Notes: generated from the sequence alone by a model not told the origin. Positions 34,878 to 43,832 are shown, counted from the stretch's first letter. The stretch: DNA of 64,000 nt from Prasinococcaceae sp. CCMP 1430 (GCA_013416795.1 RQSC01000018.1:131274-195273); one strand, 5' to 3'. Numbers and translations are program-made.

Positions 34878-37800
34878 ATGCCGCAGGATGGGACCCTGCG
34901 GCACGCAGCAAGCACGCGCTCGCCTGGTGCACCGCAGCGGCCGCTGCCCGAAGGACCCAACGGGCGCGCTCGCAGGCTGCCGGTGCGACGCCTGGGCCGG
35001 GCGCTGCGCGCCGTTGCGGTCGCCATGGCGGACCACGTCGTCCTCTGGTGGCTGCTTGCGGCGTCGCCTGAGTGGCACGAGGACGTGGGCGCCGACGCGA
35101 GGTGCCGGTCAGCAGCAGGAGCGCTCGTCACTGCGCACGCGGCGGCCGCCGCGGCCAGGGCCACCTTCACGGCTGACGATTTGGGCGCGCGCCACAACGC
35201 GTGGCCAGTGGCTGTTGCTACGGCCTCCAGCGTCCACGCGTTCTTTGCAACGGTGTTGGCGTGGCCTACTGGGCTGGGGTTGGCGCTCGCAGGCGTGGGG
35301 GCGACGGCGCTGCTCGCGGGCACGCGATGCTGCCTCGAGCGCTTCCTCGAGTCCCTCGTCAAGCGCGTCAATCGGCGCGCCCGTACGGACTCGCCCTTAG
35401 GCCTGTCACTCGCAAGGCCGCGCTTACTGCGGGTGCTGGCCATTGTGCTGGCGTCCGCCACGGCGTCCGCGATGCTCGCATTATCCGCGATGCTGTTCGC
35501 CCCCGTCCCAAGCGAGGGCGAGCCAGCGCTGCCGTTGTTGTTCCTGCCGCTCATGCTGCTTGTAGGCGCTCTGTGCCTGGCCGTGCGCCCCATCTCGTGG
35601 CTACTCGTGGCCCTGTTCGACGCGCAGGCGCCGCCGCACCACCTTGCGATAGCACGCATTGTGATTTTCGGATGCTGGTGGTGGGATATGGTACGTGCGC
35701 CACGGCGCCCTTCGGCCCTCGCCGCCCCCGTACCGGCAACTAGCACGGCGCGCGAGAGAGCGATCTTGTTCTGCAAGGCCCTAAGGGCGCGCATAGTGAA
35801 AGCGCGTGGTGCGACGGGCGCGCGACGATACACTGACGCTGTCGTGGTGCTCTCTGCTGGGGCGTGCAATACCGTGCATCTGATTGACTCGACGCGCGCT
35901 GACCGACTCGCGCTGAATGCGGGGGGGCGTAACAATCGTGACAGGCCGTCAGCCCGATGGAGCTCGCGATGGCCCTTCATCATCCTTGTCACAGCTCTGC
36001 GTGCGATGCCGTTGTCCATTTGGACCCCTGGCCGCACATGTGGAGCACCCAGGGACTGCCGCGCGAGCTGCTCGACTTCGCAGGCGGTGCCACGATTGGA
36101 GGCAACCTGAGCTGGGTCTCTTCCACGAACTTCATTCTGGCGCCTCGCCTAGACTCGGGCGAGCCCTCGACGGGCGCAATAGGGGCCGCTGCCACGAGGC
36201 TGGCGATTGTTAGTGCCATGGCGTCGGCCGGCGCGCTCTGCTGGTTGAGCCTCCCGCTCGCGGCGGTGCTGGCATTGCATTTCATTACACTGATCAATGC
36301 CGCCAGCCTCCATCTCTCTCACGGACCAAACGCTCCCTTGGTGGCTTCGTTTGTGCTCGCGCTCGCTGGCGCGCGTGCCGGGGATGCGTGGAGCATTGAC
36401 GCGCTGGTTAGACGTCACTGGCCATCGCGGGCCTCGTGGCGCCGGGAGCGCATCTTCAGCGCCGGAATTCCCTACAAGGCCGCCGCTGGGAGAGACCACG
36501 GGCTCGGAGGCGATCCTTCGACGAGGCCTTCGTCGGAGCCTGCATGGTACCGGCCGTTCATTTGGCGCGCAGCACCAGCGCTTGCGTTGCTCGCCGTCGG
36601 CTTTCAGTACACCAACGGCGGGTACCCCAAGCTCGGCTCGTCGCCGCTGCTTCCGCACGGCGGCTGGACTACCGACAGAAACCTCGTGCACTCCGGGTTA
36701 GTCATTTGGTACCGCGAGACCATTCTGCATCTAGATACGGGCTACCCACTGAATTATTTGACCCCGCGCTTGCCCGTCCTTCACGACATGCTGCAAGAGT
36801 ACACCACGTTGGCAGCGGCGCCGTCGCTGCTCGCCGAGCACTTTGCGCCTGTACTCTTCGTTGGGCCAGGCAAGCTGCGCGTCTTTACGGGCATGTTCTT
36901 TGCATGCTTCCACTCTTCCATCGAAATGCTGATGTATATCAGGCACTTTCGAACAACCATGTGCATCGTGCTGGCGCTGGGACTGCCTGCCTGGTGGCTT
37001 CGAACGCCGGCGAGCGACCGAGGGTACGCCCGCACCGGCAACGCGATCGACGAGGAGAGCGGACAGGAGGGGCGTGGCAATAACTCTACTGGGGTCGAAG
37101 ACGAACACTTGGTGAGGAACTGCAACTGCTGTGGTCGCCGTCGTGCAATCACTGCGTGGCTACACGCGACACTCTTGGTCGTCGGGGCGGCCGTGCTATG
37201 CGCCAGCAGCGCCCGCACGGCGGTGTGCTCGTCACGTCGGCGCCTGCGGGAGTTACCAATATGTAGGGGCCCGCTAAACGCTGGCGCCGTCATGTTTTCG
37301 GCGGGGCCCAAGTTCGCGCGTTCGTGGTATCCTGGCGAGAAGCCTCTCACCGTTGGTCGCAAAAGTGTTAGCGCCTTTCTGAAAGAGGCACCCGCTACCG
37401 CTGTCGTGGTGCTCGTTTCGCCCTCTGAGGAGAATGCGGACACGGCGTCGTTTAGCCACAGCGCGTCGGTGGTGGAGATCGACGCGCTCGCAGCCGCGGG
37501 CGCGCCGCCGGCTGGGCGCGTGCGCTCGACGCCTCTGCGCTGCTCCGCCGCGGCGCCGTTGCGGCCATTGTCAGACCTCGCAGGACCCGGTAGTTGCTCT
37601 GATGAGCCACTCGTTGCTGCTGCGCTCAGCCAGTGGTGTGCCTCGTCGGTGTGCTTCCGTGCCATGGTGCCTGATGCGGAGGCCGAGCAGAGGCTGTGTG
37701 CCGAACTTTTGGAGCTCGCGCCCGCAGCAGCGTCCGCGTCCTTGTCTCGAACCGGCGGTGCAAATGTCAGCGTGACTGCTGCACAGGTTGCTTCCGTTCG

Positions 37801-38302
37801 AGTGGTGGCGTCCCGCGTCTCCAGATTCTACAGGCCGCAGATGGGACTTGAGCGCCTTGAGAGGAGCCTCCCACGCATTGGAATGGACAATGCGACATCC
37901 CTCCTCGCCCGCACCTTCGATTCCGCATCGTTGCTGGACCGGCACCCGCTCTTCAAATCACATCACCCAAAGGCCCTGCGCTTGGCGGAGCAGGCCGTAA
38001 AGAACAGGGACAGGCACCCGGTCTTGCTGGAATGCTTCCGAGGCGACGGTGTGCCCCCCACGCACTACGAGGCAATGCCGGTGAGAGATCTCCGAGCACT
38101 CGCAACGAAAACAAAAAAATCCAAAACCAAACCACGCTATTTGTCGAAGGTGCGTCAGTGCATCGGACTCGGCTGCGTGCACCCTGCCGATCGTCTCCTC
38201 GTTGAACACAAGCGTGCTGTCGTCGAGAGCACGTGGCGGCATGGCGTCGGGGGCGCGCACGGGAGTGATTGGCTCGGCAGGAGTGGCCCTGATAGCGCGT
38301 AG
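34878..38302 (+). CDS. Large polytopic membrane protein with an HTTM domain (vitamin-K-dependent carboxylase/SdpB-like), 2 exons
   Basis: Exons 34878-35690 and 35945-38302 (phase-0 intron). LFDAQAPPHHLAIARIVIFG, AGDAWSIDAL, YTNGGYPKL, EHFAPVLF..LRVFTGMFFACFHSSIEMLMYIRHF follow the HTTM pattern. Start codon uncertain (alternative 35025). Confidence 0.7.
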
Positions 38303-38329: not shown

Positions 38330-40271
38330 TTATTGTTCAGAAGAGGCAGCGGCCGCCGGGTCCTCGCACGCCCGCGCGCGCATGGTAACGGCGGGCGGCG
38401 GTGAGCGGTGCGGCCGAGGCGGCAAGGTGGACGGCCAGGAGTTTAAGCGCTGGCGGCGGCGTTTGCGCTCTCCGCGGCGGCAGAGGATGGCCTCTGAATT
38501 AAGGACCGTCCCCTCCTCTGTGGCCGTCTCCACCTTCCCGTGCCACGCCGAGCGGAGCTCGAGAGGGTGGTTTTGCGACGCGTCCGCTTCTAGCGCACGC
38601 GCGAAGGGGGAGGCGAGCGGCGACTCAGCTGTGCCGAAAGATGGCCGGCCAAGCACAACGTCGTCAACTGTCGACGGCCGCTTGGCGTGTGTCGGCTGTG
38701 CACTGGCGGCGAGGGCGTACACGTCGGTCGAAACGCCCGCGAGCGCTGATGCGACGAAGTCCAACTTGGCCTCAAGGCTCGAGAGTGAACCGCGACGCTT
38801 GTTGTTTGGTATGGCCGCCGCCGCCTTCTCGGCAGACACTGGCTTGCTGCCGCCCCCCTCGCCTGGCGCGCCGAGTGGCGGCGTGAGGATCTCTGCATGC
38901 GAAGTGGCGGAGATCCGCGCAGCGGTGACCGCGTTGGCGGTGCCCTGCCACGAGCAGTAACAACAATTCCCCGAGAAAGCACGAGAGCGTTGAGGAACGG
39001 CGTTGGTGGGACGCCGGGAGCGTCAGCGAGTGTCGGGGGGGGGGGGGCGGGGGGGCATGGGCGAGTCCAGCAGAGTGCGAGCGACGCCCACGCGGCGCAG
39101 AAGCGAGGGTGGCCCGCACCTGTACAGATCTCTCCAAAAAGGAACTCGAAATGGACGCGATGAGCATGATATACAAGCTTGCACCAACAATCATAGAGCC
39201 GATCGTGATCCCCAGCTCGACGCTGGTCGCCGGTGAGTAACACGGAGGTCCGTAGCCGATGCAGAGCATGTGACTTGTGGCTATGAAGAGGGCGTATGTG
39301 TACTGGTGGATCTTGGAAGCATCCTCCAGGCCCTCGCAGCTCACCCATCCAGTCTCGGGAAAGTCTTGCAAAGCCTGCAGGAAAAAGAGCACGCACGCGT
39401 CCAGGTGTGGAAAGAGAATGATGCCAGAGGCGATCTTGATGGCGTGCAGCACCTGCGTGGCGCGCTCGCTGCCCGTGTACAGGATCCAGCGCCGCGCGTA
39501 GCGGAAGAGGCGCGGCAAGCGTAAGAGGCGCAGGAGGCGTGGCAGACGGAGAGTCATTCGCGTACGCGTGTCGCCACCCACATCAAGAAGCAGCGGCAGG
39601 TCGGCGGGCACGCTCGAAACAAGGTCCACCACGAACATCTGTCGCAGGTAGCGCCGCCGTGCTACGCGCAGCCGTCGCTCGGGAGGGCCGCCGCCGTCCG
39701 GTATGAAGCCGGTGTTCATGTTGAGCCAGATGTCCACGAGGAACATAACGTCTATCAGGCAGTCAAGTATCGATAGCGGTCCGAACGTGTCGTCACCAAA
39801 GCCGAGCCGGAAGGGGAGCACCACTGCATTGTATAGCACGCAGCACACTATGAAGAGATCCCAGCGGCAGCGCGGCGCGGACACCGGATCGAGCGCAATG
39901 CGCTCACCCGGCGGCACGATGGGCTCCAGGGGCGCATCGTGGGCGTCTGCCGCATCCTCGCTCTGTAGTGGCGCCAACACTGACTCGTGCGCCGAGGAAG
40001 AGACGGACGCCTGGAAGCTGCCTCGATGCCCCATGAGCTTGGCTAGGATGCTGCGCTGGCCGGCATTTTTCTTGGAGGGAGACGAGGGGACCACGGAGGG
40101 CGCATCGGATGCCGCATCTGGGATGGAGAAGATCTGTGGCGCGGCGAAGGCGCTTGCGGCGCTCCGCGGCGAGCTCGCAAGCGGTGTGCCAGGACCGCCC
40201 AAACTGCCGCGGCGGCGGCAGCCGTGCGTGAGGGCCAGAGGCAGGCTCAACCGCCGGCCGGCGCGCGACAT
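38330..40271 (-). CDS. Six-TM voltage-gated cation channel with an HCN-type pore, lacking C-linker/CNBD, 2 exons
   Basis: RWDLFIVCCVLYNAVVLPFRLGF (S1), DVMFLVDIWLNMNTG (S2), FVVDLVSSVP (S3), RLPRLLRLLRLPRLFRY (S4), QYTYALFIATSHMLCIGYG (pore), ITIGSMIVGASLY (S6). Intron 39119-38945. Confidence 0.88.
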
Positions 40272-40791
40272 CCCGCGTGCGCCCACGCTCGCGCCCGTCG
40301 ATGCTTCGAGCTGCTCCTGCGCACCCGCACCCTCCGCGTCCCTTGCGCCCACCCCCCCTCACCGCCGCCGCCCCCCTTCCACCGGCGCGCGCGCCTTGGC
40401 GGCGGCGCGACCGCCTTGTGGCGCAGTGGGCGCGTCCGCGCGCCCCCCCCACCCGTACCCCTGACTGGGCGCGCCGTGCCCCTTCGTAACCCCGCGGCTT
40501 TTCGTCCGAGCCGGCGGCGGCGGGGGAAACAGCGGCAGCCGCGCAGTTACGGTCAAGGCTTAGGGTAGACCAAGGCACATGCCCACTACTGTACCATCTG
40601 ATTGCACATCATATTCAATATAGGGTCTGAAACCTTCCAGAGGCGCGTGCGTTTTGACGTGCGTTTCAAACGCTCGCGATCGTGGCGGTGCGGCGGCGGC
40701 GTGTCGACCCTCGCATTCGCGGGGGGGTGCGCCCCACACCGCGCTCGCGCGTCGCGCTGCCTCACCTCACCGGCACGGGCGACGGGGCGGG

Positions 40792-41300
40792 ATGGCGGGC
40801 ACGGAGGGTGCGGCGCAGGAGCAGCCCGCGGCCAAGGTGGCGCTGGACAGCGTTGAGGATGACGACGAGTTCGAGGAGTTCGAGTGCGAGGGTGCGTGCC
40901 CGCGGCGCTGACGCGCGCTGGTAGGCTCGGACGCGAGCGCGCGCGCGGTGTAGATCTAAGGAGCGAGCGCGGGGCGGCGCGGCGCGGGGCGCGCACGGGG
41001 GGCGCACGGGGGGTGGGCCCCGGGGTGCTGCAGCGAGCGCGTTGTGACTCGCGATCGGCACAAGCTCGTAACCACGCCGCGCTCCGTAGATGCGCGTCAA
41101 GGCGTGTGCTGACGTCTACCCGTGCTCGTGTTGGTACGTCGTGTGGCTGCCTCCTGTGCGGCTTCGCATGCACAGACTGGGGCAAGGCTGATGAGGCCAA
41201 GGGGGAAACGAAGATGTGGGAAGACGATTGGGACGACGCGGGCACCAAGGACGACTTCTCACAGCAGCTGCGTGCCGCTTTGAAGGCTGGCACTAAGTGA
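40792..41300 (+). CDS. SEM1: DSS1/SEM1 (26S proteasome lid/TREX-2 subunit), 2 exons
   Basis: Exons 40792-40891 and 41176-41300 give EDDDEFEEFECE|DW...WEDDWDD...DDFSQQLRAAL. Confidence 0.95.
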
Positions 41301-41521: not shown

Positions 41522-42670
41522 TCAGTAGACGGGCGTCTTCTTGAGCGAGTTTTGCAGGAGCGTGTGCTGAGCGACGCCAATCCGCACCTCCATGCCCTTT
41601 AGCTCGTCCGTGAGGCGCGCGATGGCGTTCTTGATCTTCACCAAGGGGCTCGTGTCGGAAATGTTTCCGCTGCGCTCGTCCAGATTGCCCTTCACCTGCT
41701 CCAGCTCCTCGGAGATGCGCGCGAACTCGTTTGTAAGTTCGGCCACGCGCTCGGTCTGCTTGTTGTAGCGCTCCTGGACGACCGACAGCGCGTCCCGCGC
41801 TTGGCGGTAGTCGGCGCACGCGGCATCGAACTGGGAGTTGATGTATTTCTCACGCTGCGACACCTTCTCCACCGCATCGCGCGCCGCCGCCTCGACCCCT
41901 CGCAACATCGACATGCTCGAGGGCACGATCTTCTTGATGGACTCGTGGTGCTGTTTGGCCTGCTCGAGGTGTGACCGCCAGTCCTTGCTGTCCTGCACCA
42001 CCGTCACCCGAAGCTGCGGCGCCACGCGCTCCACCTCCATGCGCCACTCGGCCGCAGGCACGCGTGACTCGATCGCCGCGCGGTCCTCCGCGTCCTGGTC
42101 CATGTTGGACGAGTACAGCCCATCGGCGCCGCCGCCGGCAACATCCTCGCCCTCCCCCTGCGTGTCTGCCCCTAGCAGCGCCTCCTCCTCCTCCTCGTCG
42201 TCGACAACGAAGTCGTCTGGACCGCCCTGCTGGTCTGGTCCCTCGTTCTCGTACTCTGACTCCTCCACCGCCGCGTCCACCCCCAGCTTCTGCGCGGCCC
42301 ACCTGAAGCCCGTTCGCTCGAGCGCGAAGTCGCACAGGTTGTCCAGCACACCGCACACAGCCTCCCCGTGCCCCTGCTTGAGCTTCGTGGGAGGAAATGG
42401 GGGCGGGGCGAAACCCGCGTTCCTGAGCTCCGCCAGGATAGAAGCGCACGTCGCATTAGGGTCGTCGAACTGCCCCGGCGCTGGGAAGGCGCGCCCACCC
42501 TTGCCAAGGAGCCACGACACCAGCGACGTGAAGTAGAAGAACTGCTCGTTGGGGTTGGCTGCCGGCGCCGCGAAGTAGGCACGCCCAACGGGCGTCAAGG
42601 CAGGGCGTTGCTTTTTGCAGAAGTCGGCCTCGTATTGCAGCAGCTTGAGCTTGTCCGCGACAGCCTCCAT
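41522..42670 (-). CDS. IFT57: Intraflagellar transport protein 57 (an additional 5' exon is possible)
   Basis: MEAVADKLKLLQYEADFC, YFA..NPNEQFFYFTSLVSWLL, QFDDPNATC, KLKQGHGEAVC, WRMEVERVAPQLRV, KDWRSHLEQ, DTSPLVKIK, MEVRIGVAQH. Confidence 0.95.
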   Translation of the reverse strand: MEAVADKLKLLQYEADFCKKQRPALTPVGRAYFAAPAANPNEQFFYFTSLVSWLLGKGGRAFPAPGQFDDPNATCASILAELRNAGFAPPPFPPTKLKQGHGEAVCGVLDNLCDFALERTGFRWAAQKLGVDAAVEESEYENEGPDQQGGPDDFVVDDEEEEEALLGADTQGEGEDVAGGGADGLYSSNMDQDAEDRAAIESRVPAAEWRMEVERVAPQLRVTVVQDSKDWRSHLEQAKQHHESIKKIVPSSMSMLRGVEAAARDAVEKVSQREKYINSQFDAACADYRQARDALSVVQERYNKQTERVAELTNEFARISEELEQVKGNLDERSGNISDTSPLVKIKNAIARLTDELKGMEVRIGVAQHTLLQNSLKKTPVY

Positions 42671-43832
42671 GACGACATCGGCCGGCGCTGCGCTGTCGAG
42701 TGCCCGTCCAGCAGTGCCACTCTGCCACTCCGCGGCGCTCTGCCAGAGCGCCGTGTGTGGGGGAAGGCATCGCGGCGCGAAAGCACACAGCAGTTGCAGC
42801 ATGGCCGCAGCAGGCAGATTGGCCCATCGAAGCTTGCGGGTCAGAGCAGCACAGGCGCGGGCCACTCCGCGCGCATCGCCAGTCGATCGCGGGCGCACGC
42901 AGAGGGCGTGGCGCGGCAAGCGCGCGCCGCGCCGAGATGCCGGTCAAACGCGCGATCCACGGGGCGGCACGCGCACGGATGGGAGGGGGGGCGCCCCGTC
43001 TCTGGGGCAGCACTTGGCTTCGCAAATACGCCGCGCCGCCCTATTCGACCCGCCCTCTTCACCCGTGCGCCCCGCGGGCCATCCCGTTCCGTCCCCTCGC
43101 CTGCGTCGCCGCCGGTCAACAGCGCCGACGACTCGCGCGCGCGCGCCGAAACCGTGCCGGCGCGAAATCAAACGCGCGCTCGTGCAGCCGTGCTCGCGGC
43201 GCTGTGCGCCACAGTTGGGCTGAGCATGCGCACGTTTTCGCTGTCCTCCCTCCCCCCTTGCGCAGCGCGCGCTGTGTGGCGAGTGCCCCCCTTGTCGCCC
43301 GCCCCCCTCCGCGCCCCGTGCATGCGCCCGCCCTCACTAACAGCCACTTCCTCATCCTGAGCAGAGAGCGTGCTCGAGGGGCGAATGTTGCACCGTAAGT
43401 TAGGGGTTCGAATTGGGGTAATCTAAAGGGTTAATACTGTGTGCCTCGCGAGCTCGGCCCACGCGGGTGAGGCCTCGAGGCCTCGATTGCAGCCTCGCTG
43501 AAGGCCTCGCCACAGCGCGCGCGGCGAGCGCGGGTGAAGGCGGGCAGGCGGGCGGGGAGGGAGAAGGGGGGGGCGGTGGGTGTTTGAGCTGGGGCACGAA
43601 ACGGGCGGGGGTGTGTGGGGGGGGGTGAAGGGGACAAGGGCTGCTGGGTGCGCGCCCGCGCGCTTGCGCGGGGCTGCGTGTCGGGCGGCGAGCGAACGAG
43701 CGACCTGCAGCGTCACAGCGCAGGCGCAGGTTGGAGAGCCCCGGCGGCCGCTGGCAGGGCCGCGGAGCGTGTGGACGCGGGTAACAGTCGCAGGCGGTGC
43801 TGTTGCTGTTGCTGCGAGAGATGGAGGGAGGG

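What the first reader, a model, noticed from the sequence alone, without database searches (positions are those of the whole stretch)
38330..40271. HCN-type channel pore (SHMLCIGYG) in a green alga, with no cyclic-nucleotide-binding domain
Seen in sequence: pore helix/filter QYTYALFIATSHMLCIGYG and S6 ITIGSMIVGASLY nearly match animal HCN pacemaker channels (YSYALFKAMSHMLCIGYG..ITMLSMIVGATCY), not plant Shaker (TTVGYG) or CNGC filters. There is a long Arg-rich S4. Immediately after S6 an intron leads to a low-complexity tail, so the C-linker and CNBD, defining parts of HCN/CNG/KCNH channels, are absent. Inference: a purely voltage-gated (possibly hyperpolarisation-activated) cation channel, informative for the origin of HCN gating, perhaps flagellar.
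Basis: partly seen in the sequence, partly recalled or inferred. Interest (0 to 1): 0.72.

Follow-up and report, generated by a model that had tools for sequence, protein, structure and literature searches.

The report
Pacemaker-type ion channel lacking its nucleotide sensor
A marine green alga carries an intact gene for a voltage-sensing ion channel whose membrane part closely resembles the animal heart and brain pacemaker (HCN) channel. It has lost the whole cyclic-nucleotide-sensing tail, as have relatives in other green picoalgae, so it is a natural test of what that tail does.

Summary
Window 38330-40271 (minus strand) holds a two-exon gene for a six-helix channel. It has an invariant HCN-type CIGYG filter, an S4 with seven in-register arginines, and intact S2/S3 counter-charges. 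Among solved structures HCN1 is by far the best match (E 1e-40, against 1e-16 or weaker for KCNH, plant Shaker and CNG). A predicted model overlays HCN1/3/4 at 2.3 A.

- No trace of them is found in the 64-kb window.
- A convergent gene's stop codon lies 27 nt past the channel's stop.
- A 77%-identical intronless relative on a Tara contig has the same build.
- Chloropicon primus has two intronless 391/392-aa paralogues without them.

In a tree, 21 CNBD-less proteins form one clade (support 99/98). That clade sits inside an algal clade whose other members carry a C-linker and CNBD. Animal HCN is a separate branch of the same HCN-like group. One ancient loss is therefore the best reading.

Gating polarity, ion selectivity and any flagellar role are untested. 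The intron is inferred from comparison, not seen in RNA. I found no paper describing such a clade. The closest precedent is the engineered HCN1 deletion that starts at D401, the same point where homology ends here. I rate it a new variant of a known kind, of moderate interest.

The parts
39120..40271 (-). Exon 1 (384 codons): disordered N-terminus, S1-S6 and pore, ending in ...ISSSFLERSVQ
   Evidence: The first in-frame ATG after the upstream stop is at 40271. BLASTP to the intronless relative P0003 runs from residue 6 to exactly residue 384, SFLERSVQ against SFLAKSVE. Pfam Ion_trans covers ORF residues 164-407.
39474..39878 (-). Voltage-sensor domain S1-S4 (residues 132-266). Counter-charges are D174, F177, D180 (S2) and D216 (S3). 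S4 has Arg at 242, 245, 248, 251, 254, 257 and 260, prolines at 244 and 253, and Met at 239.
   Evidence: Helix limits come from the AF2 model. Column table. Alignment.
39369..39467 (-). S5 (residues 269-301), joined to S4 by only two residues (G267, S268), the short linker of non-domain-swapped CNBD-family channels. H276 replaces the near-invariant Arg that corresponds to HCN1 R297.
   Evidence: The role of R297 is taken from PMC10462129.
39249..39314 (-). Pore helix and selectivity filter (residues 320-341); CIGYG lies at 39263-39249
   Evidence: Read from the sequence. CIGYG is kept in 39 of the 40 aligned sequences; the exception is the sponge sequence with CIGFG.
39123..39224 (-). S6 (residues 350-383). 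S382 stands where 35 of 40 relatives, and HCN1 (D401), have Asp.
   Evidence: The numbering of D401 is taken from PMC13715422.
38945..39119 (-). Inferred intron (GT at 39119-39118, AG at 38946-38945, 175 nt). The alternative acceptor AG at 38892-38891 gives 229 nt.
   Evidence: The frame changes between exon 1 and the conserved tail. The tail frame has a stop near 39025. Among three haplotypes the indels of +6, +9 and +1 nt lie only here. No RNA junction was seen; two metatranscriptome contigs run across the donor unspliced.
38330..38944 (-). Exon 2 (204 codons plus stop): cytoplasmic tail with no C-linker or CNBD
   Evidence: BLASTP of the tail to P0003 residues 424-539 gives E 3e-15. Pfam finds nothing. 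Translation.
38705..38797 (-). RRGS basophilic-kinase-type site followed by a 28-residue heptad helix (SLSSLEAKLDFVASALAGVSTDVYALAA). All 8 of its a/d positions are hydrophobic.
   Evidence: The same motif and register occur in P0003.

Best explanation
This is an intact gene, under purifying selection, for a six-helix subunit of a tetrameric voltage-gated cation channel. It belongs to the HCN-like branch of the CNBD-channel superfamily. In an ancestor shared with Chloropicon-type and other marine green picoalgae, everything after the S6 bundle crossing (C-linker and CNBD) was lost.

Shown:
- The architecture, and its conservation in other algae.
- The HCN-type CIGYG filter.
- A complete voltage sensor: six to seven in-register S4 arginines, plus the S2/S3 acidic residues and aromatic residue.
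- A two-residue S4-S5 link, as in non-swapped CNBD-family channels.

Inferred:
- S4 movement gates the pore directly through the S4/S5/S6 interface.
- The pore passes K+ and Na+ with weak selectivity, as in HCN.
- The channel cannot respond directly to cAMP or cGMP.
- It most likely opens on hyperpolarisation (about 50%), because engineered HCN1 deleted from D401, the same position, still assembles and was characterised as a working HCN channel.
- In the Prasinoderma pair, both partners of the HCN1 R297-D401 closed-state salt bridge are replaced (H276 or Q; S382). The closed state is therefore probably less stable than in HCN.
- Regulation may have moved to the tails (RRxS sites), and the heptad helix may help assembly.
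For: - Pfam Ion_trans, E 2e-19.
- PDB phmmer: HCN1 E 1.4e-40, against KCNH 3e-16, KAT3/AKT1 6e-14 and CNGA1 7e-14.
- AF2 core pLDDT above 90. The top 21 Foldseek PDB hits are all HCN1/3/4, at rmsd 2.3 A.
- No C-linker or CNBD in the window, or in six related loci.
- The intronless relative P0003 on contig L001 has the same build and the same tail.
- Chloropicon primus has two intronless 391/392-aa paralogues in two assemblies.
- The 21 CNBD-less rows form one clade, 99/98, needing one change of state. It is nested in a 28-row algal clade, 99/98, whose other members have a canonical C-linker and a CNBD with the GSYFGE...RTA motif.
- All six differences in the membrane core among three haplotypes are synonymous.
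- Near-identical contigs occur in seawater metatranscriptomes.
- Conserved sensor and filter columns.
- HCN1 deleted from D401 forms a tetramer with a partly open pore and had been characterised functionally (PMC13715422).
Against: - No electrophysiology exists for any member of the clade.
- In HCN-EAG chimeras, C-linker residues decide gating polarity (PMC11309966), so a channel with no C-linker could have either polarity.
- S4 lacks the three outermost HCN charge positions and the HCN serine. It has two prolines.
- No HCN domain is detectable.
- The R297-D401 equivalents are lost, so the channel could leak or be only weakly voltage dependent.
- The intron is not confirmed by RNA. The only contigs crossing the donor are unspliced.
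- Expression in culture was not shown.
Confidence: 0.55

Rival explanations
1. The architecture is the same, but the working differs. Without the C-linker ring the channel is depolarisation-activated, bipolar, or largely voltage-independent. It would then be a background cation or K+ conductance rather than a pacemaker-type inward current.
For: C-linker residues switch polarity in HCN-EAG chimeras (PMC11309966). HCN1 without its C-terminus has a partly open gate (PMC13715422). Both partners of the closed-state salt bridge are replaced here. S4 is shorter than in animal HCN.
Against: The authors of the chimera study expect the C-terminus to contribute less in a wild-type HCN background. The S4 C-terminal half, S5, the turret (LQDFP..WV) and S6 are HCN-like. 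Strict conservation of six S4 arginines and of the counter-charges across the clade argues for real voltage sensing.
Confidence: 0.3
2. Cyclic-nucleotide control is kept in trans. The CNBD-less subunit co-assembles with a CNBD-bearing paralogue, or binds a separate C-linker/CNBD protein.
For: CNBD-bearing relatives with the same pore and S4 exist in other green algae. HCN-family subunits are known to form heteromers (general knowledge).
Against: A profile search with the algal C-linker plus CNBD, among proteins of about 120-390 aa, found only fragments that begin inside S6 and animal HCN pieces. It found no stand-alone algal protein. None of the 94 hits of the core search was named as a CNBD-bearing channel of Prasinoderma or Chloropicon. 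That database may not hold or label those proteomes fully, so this evidence is weak.
Confidence: 0.1
3. Artefact or dead gene: the CNBD exons were lost in assembly, or the locus is a truncated pseudogene.
For: The intron is not confirmed by RNA, and culture-derived contigs did not cover the gene.
Against: Three independent assemblies agree: the window and two Tara scaffolds. A convergent ORF's stop codon lies 27 nt past the channel's stop. The intronless relative and the Chloropicon paralogues end in the same way. Core substitutions are all synonymous. The clade is conserved at 44-48% identity across two green-algal phyla.
Confidence: 0.03

Closest known systems
Animal HCN1-4 pacemaker channels (PDB 5U6O, 6GYN, 8INZ and others)
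   Same: The membrane core is 32-36% identical. The SHMLCIGYG filter is identical. S6, the turret and the S2/S3 counter-charges are HCN-like. The S4-S5 link is short. They are the best sequence and fold matches.
   Different: No HCN domain, C-linker or CNBD. S4 has 7 in-register Arg, where HCN has K/R at 9 positions plus a Ser. It has two S4 prolines. The R297 and D401 equivalents are H and S. In the tree it sits in an algal clade, not inside the animal clade.
Engineered HCN1 deleted from D401 (HCN1-deltaC; Wainger et al. 2001, as cited in PMC13715422; 401-aa chain 9r1u)
   Same: It ends at the same point, right after the S6 bundle crossing. Homology of the algal clade to CNBD-bearing channels stops within two residues of the D401 position.
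   Different: The algal proteins are natural and long conserved. They carry their own tails: RRGS plus a heptad helix in the Prasinoderma lineage, and short conserved C-terminal tails in Chloropicon.
CNBD-bearing HCN-like channels of green algae (Pseudoscourfieldia marina 'voltage-gated ion channel' P0028, Pedinophyceae P0032, uncultured P0026/27/37/38/51)
   Same: Same pore, same LPRLLRLLRLPRLFRY S4, and a hydrophobic residue at S4 position 239. They are 38-44% identical and are the nearest outgroups in the tree.
   Different: They keep a canonical C-linker and a CNBD with an intact phosphate-binding cassette.
Chloropicon primus 'ion transport protein' P0006/P0024 (annotated but, as far as I could find, never described)
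   Same: Same CNBD-less clade. They are intronless, 391/392 aa and 44-46% identical.
   Different: They keep the Arg-Asp pair equivalent to HCN1 R297-D401. Their tails are much shorter (24-38 residues) and lack the heptad helix.
HCNL1 proton channel of zebrafish sperm (PMC7306766)
   Same: [quoted passage not shown] A Met interrupts the S4 arginine series. Under the ungapped alignment, M239 here falls at the same third position.
   Different: HCNL1 keeps a CNBD and has lost the CIGYG motif, so its pore does not conduct. Here CIGYG is intact and the CNBD is gone. The S3-S4 alignment is ambiguous (disagree).
Plant KAT1/AKT1 inward rectifiers
   Same: Non-swapped CNBD-family core; hyperpolarisation-activated.
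   Different: Much weaker match (E 1e-9 to 1e-13). They have a TxGYG K+ filter and keep a C-linker and a CNBD-homology domain.

Membership tests
Animal HCN family | Membrane core most similar to HCN, with the CIGYG filter | tested here: met
   phmmer E 1e-40 to HCN1, 24 orders of magnitude better than the next family. Foldseek's top 21 hits are all HCN. CIGYG lies at 39263-39249.
Animal HCN family | C-linker plus cyclic-nucleotide-binding domain after S6 | tested here: not met
   No PF00027 in any downstream ORF. tblastn of ten CNBD-bearing relatives hits only 39965-39096 in the 64-kb window. A convergent ORF's stop codon lies 27 nt past the channel's stop.
Animal HCN family | N-terminal HCN domain (Pfam PF08412, Ion_trans_N) | tested here: not met
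   No hit at E up to 10 for the N-terminus of this protein or of six algal relatives. Only a short S..KLxG motif aligns with the FSLRMFGS stretch of HCN1.
Animal HCN family | S4 with about ten in-register positions (nine basic residues plus a Ser) | tested here: not met
   Seven in-register Arg (242-260). There is Arg at the Ser position and Met at 239. The two outermost positions are absent.
Animal HCN family | Placement inside the animal HCN clade | tested here: not met
   It falls in a 28-row algal clade (99/98). Animal HCN forms a separate 19-row clade (100/99) within the same 56-row HCN-like group (100/98).
Animal HCN family | Opening on hyperpolarisation, mixed Na+/K+ current, shift by cAMP | not testable with these tools
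   Needs electrophysiology.
CNBD-channel superfamily (HCN, CNG, KCNH, plant Shaker-like, CNGC) | Homologous non-swapped 6TM core with a very short S4-S5 link | tested here: met
   All 60 listed PDB sequence hits are CNBD-family channels. In the model, S4 (243-266) joins S5 (269-301) through two residues.
CNBD-channel superfamily (HCN, CNG, KCNH, plant Shaker-like, CNGC) | A CNBD or CNBD-homology domain | tested here: not met
   By descent it belongs here, through secondary loss. By architecture it does not.
Ordinary Kv (Shaker-type) channels | Kv-type core, TVGYG filter, long domain-swapping S4-S5 linker | tested here: not met
   No Kv chain appears among the PDB sequence hits listed or among the 50 Foldseek matches printed. 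The filter is CIGYG and the linker is two residues.
HCNL proton channels | Loss of the CIGYG pore motif, together with Met at the third S4 position | tested here: not met
   CIGYG is intact. A Met at 239 is present, but its equivalence to M169 depends on an ambiguous loop alignment.

The most novel reading that the evidence does not exclude
The CNBD-less clade is a family of natural minimal HCN cores, as small as 391 aa in Chloropicon. It would have been kept since before Prasinodermophyta and Chlorophyta diverged, and it would still open on hyperpolarisation. That would show that reverse-polarity gating needs no C-linker, CNBD or HCN domain, and that an Ih-type conductance exists in the green lineage. 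A further, more speculative layer concerns the hydrophobic residue that ends the S4 arginine series. It is Met here, at the position of HCNL1 M169 under one alignment. It could add a voltage-sensor (omega or proton) pathway.
Probability: 0.4. Interest if true: 0.75.

Novelty: new variant of a known kind. Interest (0 to 1): 0.58.

Why it matters
How HCN channels reverse the usual polarity of voltage gating is still debated, as is how much the C-linker/CNBD ring contributes. Deletion constructs and chimeras give partly conflicting answers (PMC13715422, PMC11309966).

Here evolution has run the deletion experiment and kept the product. The clade consists of small, mostly intronless HCN-like proteins that end at the position of HCN1 D401. 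Within the clade there is natural variation at the R297-D401 closed-state lock. These proteins are ready-made material for electrophysiology and cryo-EM.

The finding also shows that HCN-type pores and sensors are widespread in early-branching green algae. It would add a voltage-only cation conductance to the sparse picture of membrane excitability in marine picophytoplankton.

Tried and rejected
1. RNA proof of the intron. One call laid three seawater metatranscriptomes and one possible culture RNA run on the gene. It gave 99%-identical contigs on parts of exon 1 but no splice joint. Two short contigs (39071-39267 and 39004-39267) cross the donor unspliced. They could be pre-mRNA, DNA carry-over or a retained intron, so this is not decisive. 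The read-through tail has no similarity to P0003, and it is frame-shifted by a 1-nt indel in one haplotype. I therefore rejected read-through as the main product.

2. My first acceptor choice (38891) is not the only one. The site cag|GGC at 38945 is also in phase, and it is the first AG after a pyrimidine-rich run. I now favour 38945 and give both.

3. A separate CNBD gene. A profile search with the algal C-linker plus CNBD returned only fragments of full-length channels.

4. HCN domain. Pfam found nothing at E up to 10.

5. Weak tblastn hits. The first C-linker residues of four related queries hit the plus strand at 35993-36076 with E 3-7. I treated these as noise: wrong strand, non-independent queries, and the ORF there has no Pfam match.

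6. Synteny. The gene downstream of P0003 on L001 is unrelated to the window's 781-aa ORF, so no synteny claim is made.

7. Outgroups. A tree with explicit KCNH, CNG, plant Shaker and Kv outgroups was not built, because I had no referable sequences for them. Relative PDB scores stand in for it.

8. Literature. Eight searches found no description of CNBD-less HCN-like algal channels. Pozdnyakov et al. [quoted passage not shown]

9. Big search. The claim does not rest on an absence of relatives.

Full report
**What is there**

The window is GC-rich, 63-72% in 2-kb windows. On the minus strand an ORF (38772..40352) matches Pfam Ion_trans (E 2.3e-19). Its first ATG is at 40271. They align without gaps to human HCN1: QYTYALFIATSHMLCIGYG against QYSYALFKAMSHMLCIGYG, and ITIGSMIVGASLY against ITMLSMIVGATCY.

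**Gene model**

Exon 1 runs from 40271 to 39120 and ends in ...ISSSFLERSVQ, followed by GTGCGG. The closest relative is P0003 (77% identical in the core). It is one continuous 578-codon ORF on a 3.4-kb Tara Oceans contig (L001).
- Exon 1 aligns to P0003 up to exactly SFLERSVQ against SFLAKSVE.
- The reading frame that ends at the stop 38332-38330 aligns to P0003 residues 424-539 (E 3e-15).

That tail frame differs from the exon-1 frame and has a stop near 39025, so an intron is required. Two phase-0 acceptors fit:
- cag|GGC at 38945 gives a 175-nt intron. It is the first AG after a pyrimidine-rich run. The S6-to-RRGS spacer would then be 49 residues, against 52 in P0003.
- cagag|ATC at 38891 gives a 229-nt intron.

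I favour 38945 but cannot decide between them.

Two near-identical Tara scaffolds (L002, L003) differ from the window by +9 and +6 nt in a poly-C run. L002 also has one extra A at 38969. All of these lie inside the inferred intron. The six differences in the membrane core are all synonymous. The gene is therefore under purifying selection, and the intron region tolerates frame-breaking indels.

RNA evidence is weak. Seawater metatranscriptome contigs at about 99% identity cover parts of exon 1. No splice joint was seen, and two short contigs cross the donor unspliced.

**Is the CNBD really absent?**

Yes.
- Pfam finds no cNMP_binding domain in any of the three downstream ORFs.
- tblastn of ten full-length CNBD-bearing relatives against all 64 kb hits only 39965-39096. 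Every alignment stops at the end of S6.
- The stop codon of a convergent 781-codon ORF (35957-38302, no Pfam match) lies 27 nt from the channel's stop.
- The intronless P0003 has the same build.
- Chloropicon primus has two intronless paralogues of 391 and 392 aa, about 4 kb apart, in two independent assemblies. One is followed after 80 nt by a convergent GTPase gene.
- None of these loci contains C-linker or CNBD coding sequence.
- Many metagenomic variants end with the same conserved C-termini.

**Relationships**

The word-based protein search gave three tiers of relatives:
- Proteins of 350-550 aa with Ion_trans only, 43-48% identical.
- Algal channels with Ion_trans plus cNMP_binding, from Pseudoscourfieldia marina, a pedinophyte and uncultured algae, 38-44% identical.
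- Animal HCN, 30-34% identical.

I built a maximum-likelihood tree of the membrane core (65 rows, LG+C20+F+G4; quick version).
- All 21 CNBD-less rows fall in one clade (ultrafast bootstrap/SH-aLRT 99/98). That needs one change of state on the tree.
- This clade sits inside a 28-row algal clade (99/98). The other members of that clade carry a canonical C-linker and a CNBD with an intact GSYFGE...RTA cassette.
- Animal HCN is a separate 19-row clade (100/99). Both belong to a 56-row HCN-like group (100/98).
- I left five near-duplicate rows out of the tree, along with every row that lacked full coverage of the core.
- One apparent exception, P0031, keeps the start of a C-linker and then reads into proline-rich sequence. 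I read it as a truncated gene model.

With CNBD-bearing outgroups, a single loss of the C-terminal module is the most economical reading. I did not verify that independently. Prasinodermophyta and Chlorophyta are separate phyla. The loss is therefore old if descent was vertical. Transfer between marine picoalgae is not excluded.

**Anatomy and likely working**

AlphaFold2 on a 40-sequence alignment gave a confident core (pLDDT above 90 in most blocks, mean 78 over the whole chain). The 21 best PDB fold matches are all HCN1, HCN3 or HCN4, at about 2.3 A over about 260 columns. AKT1, hERG, GORK, EAG and CNG follow.

The column table shows:
- The S2 and S3 counter-charges and the aromatic residue are kept (D174, F177, D180, D216).
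- Arg stands at 242, 245, 248, 251, 254 and 257, plus R260.
- CIGYG is intact.

S4 (243-266) joins S5 (269-301) through two residues. This is the short link typical of non-swapped CNBD-family channels.

Compared with animal HCN, S4 lacks the two outermost charge positions. It has Arg where HCN has its serine, and it carries two prolines. It is interrupted at position 239 by a hydrophobic residue: Met here and in P0003, Leu or Ile in most of the algal clade, Arg in animal HCN. The motif LPRLLRLLRLPRLFRY is shared with the CNBD-bearing algal relatives, so it is not a consequence of losing the CNBD.

Homology to CNBD-bearing channels ends within two residues of the HCN1 D401 position. That is where the engineered HCN1-deltaC deletion begins. 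That construct assembles as a tetramer with a partly open gate. It was characterised functionally by Wainger et al. and Wang et al., as cited in PMC13715422. This is the main basis for expecting a working channel gated by voltage alone, probably opening on hyperpolarisation.

Against a firm call on polarity, Lin et al. (PMC11309966) show that C-linker residues set polarity in HCN-EAG chimeras. They do expect a smaller effect in a wild-type HCN background.

One detail is specific to this lineage. HCN1 R297 (S5) and D401 (end of S6) form a salt bridge that stabilises the closed state (PMC10462129). The Arg is kept in 38 of 40 aligned sequences and the Asp in 35 of 40. Here the two positions are H276 and S382, and in P0003 they are Gln and Ser. 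The Chloropicon proteins keep both. Loss of both partners together suggests a less stable closed state in the Prasinoderma lineage. This is an inference.

**Tails**

The C-terminal tail is not just low-complexity. An RRGS site is followed by a 28-residue helix-like stretch in which all eight a/d heptad positions are hydrophobic. The register is the same in P0003. It may help assembly in place of the C-linker ring, and RRxS sites in both tails could be kinase targets. Both ideas are speculation.

A short N-terminal motif (S..KLxG) aligns with part of the HCN domain of HCN1. Pfam's HCN-domain model does not match.

**Rivals**

- Opposite or absent voltage dependence: about 0.3.
- CNBD supplied in trans: about 0.1. 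The profile search for stand-alone C-linker/CNBD proteins found only fragments beginning inside S6, which is weak negative evidence.
- Artefact or pseudogene: about 0.03, contradicted by three assemblies, the relatives and the synonymous-only core changes.

**Known or new?**

HCN-like CNBD channels in protists are known. Pozdnyakov et al. 2020 found that animal HCN clusters with channels of several Diaphoretickes lineages. They mention isolated sequences lacking the C-region as probably incomplete. I found no paper that describes a conserved CNBD-less HCN-like clade or these algal proteins. The Chloropicon genes are annotated only as 'ion transport protein'. I rate this a new variant of a known kind.

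The flagellar suggestion is unsupported. The nearby IFT57 gene is not evidence.

Noticed in passing
L005:948-3188 (Chloropicon primus CP060758.1), compared with L006: A 746-aa gene with Pfam Cas12f1-like_TNB and HTH_OrfB_IS605 (TnpB/Fanzor-like) lies about 2.8 kb upstream of the CNBD-less channel gene in one C. primus assembly. The other assembly has different genes (PRP3, TEX47) upstream of the shared RimM gene. This may be an insertion or rearrangement polymorphism of a Fanzor-like element.
   Followed up: no
window 41525-42919 (-) and 40884-41300 (+): There is an IFT57 gene (Pfam E 4e-117), and between it and the channel gene a small DSS1/SEM1-like ORF. The same order is found on both Tara scaffolds. 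So the alga keeps intraflagellar-transport genes.
   Followed up: partly
window 35957-38302 (+): A 781-codon uninterrupted ORF with several hydrophobic stretches has no Pfam match. It converges on the channel gene, with stop codons 27 nt apart. A contig of a possible culture RNA run reaches 38346, so the 3' ends probably overlap.
   Followed up: partly
window about 39035-39060 and 38969: A poly-C run in the inferred intron varies by 0, +6 and +9 nt among three haplotypes, and one haplotype has an extra A at 38969. Short 31-nt metatranscriptome contigs pile up on the poly-C run, probably as low-complexity cross-matches.
   Followed up: yes
window 39557-39555 (codon M239): Met interrupts the S4 arginine series here and in P0003. 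Under an ungapped S4 alignment this is the position of M169 of the zebrafish proton channel HCNL1. Under the phmmer alignment it is a different position.
   Followed up: partly
P0077 (Triparma laevis), P0078, P0089, P0090: Other distant hits also show Ion_trans without a Pfam CNBD, although they have 78-365 residues after the core. I did not check whether these are further losses, divergent CNBDs or bad gene models.
   Followed up: no
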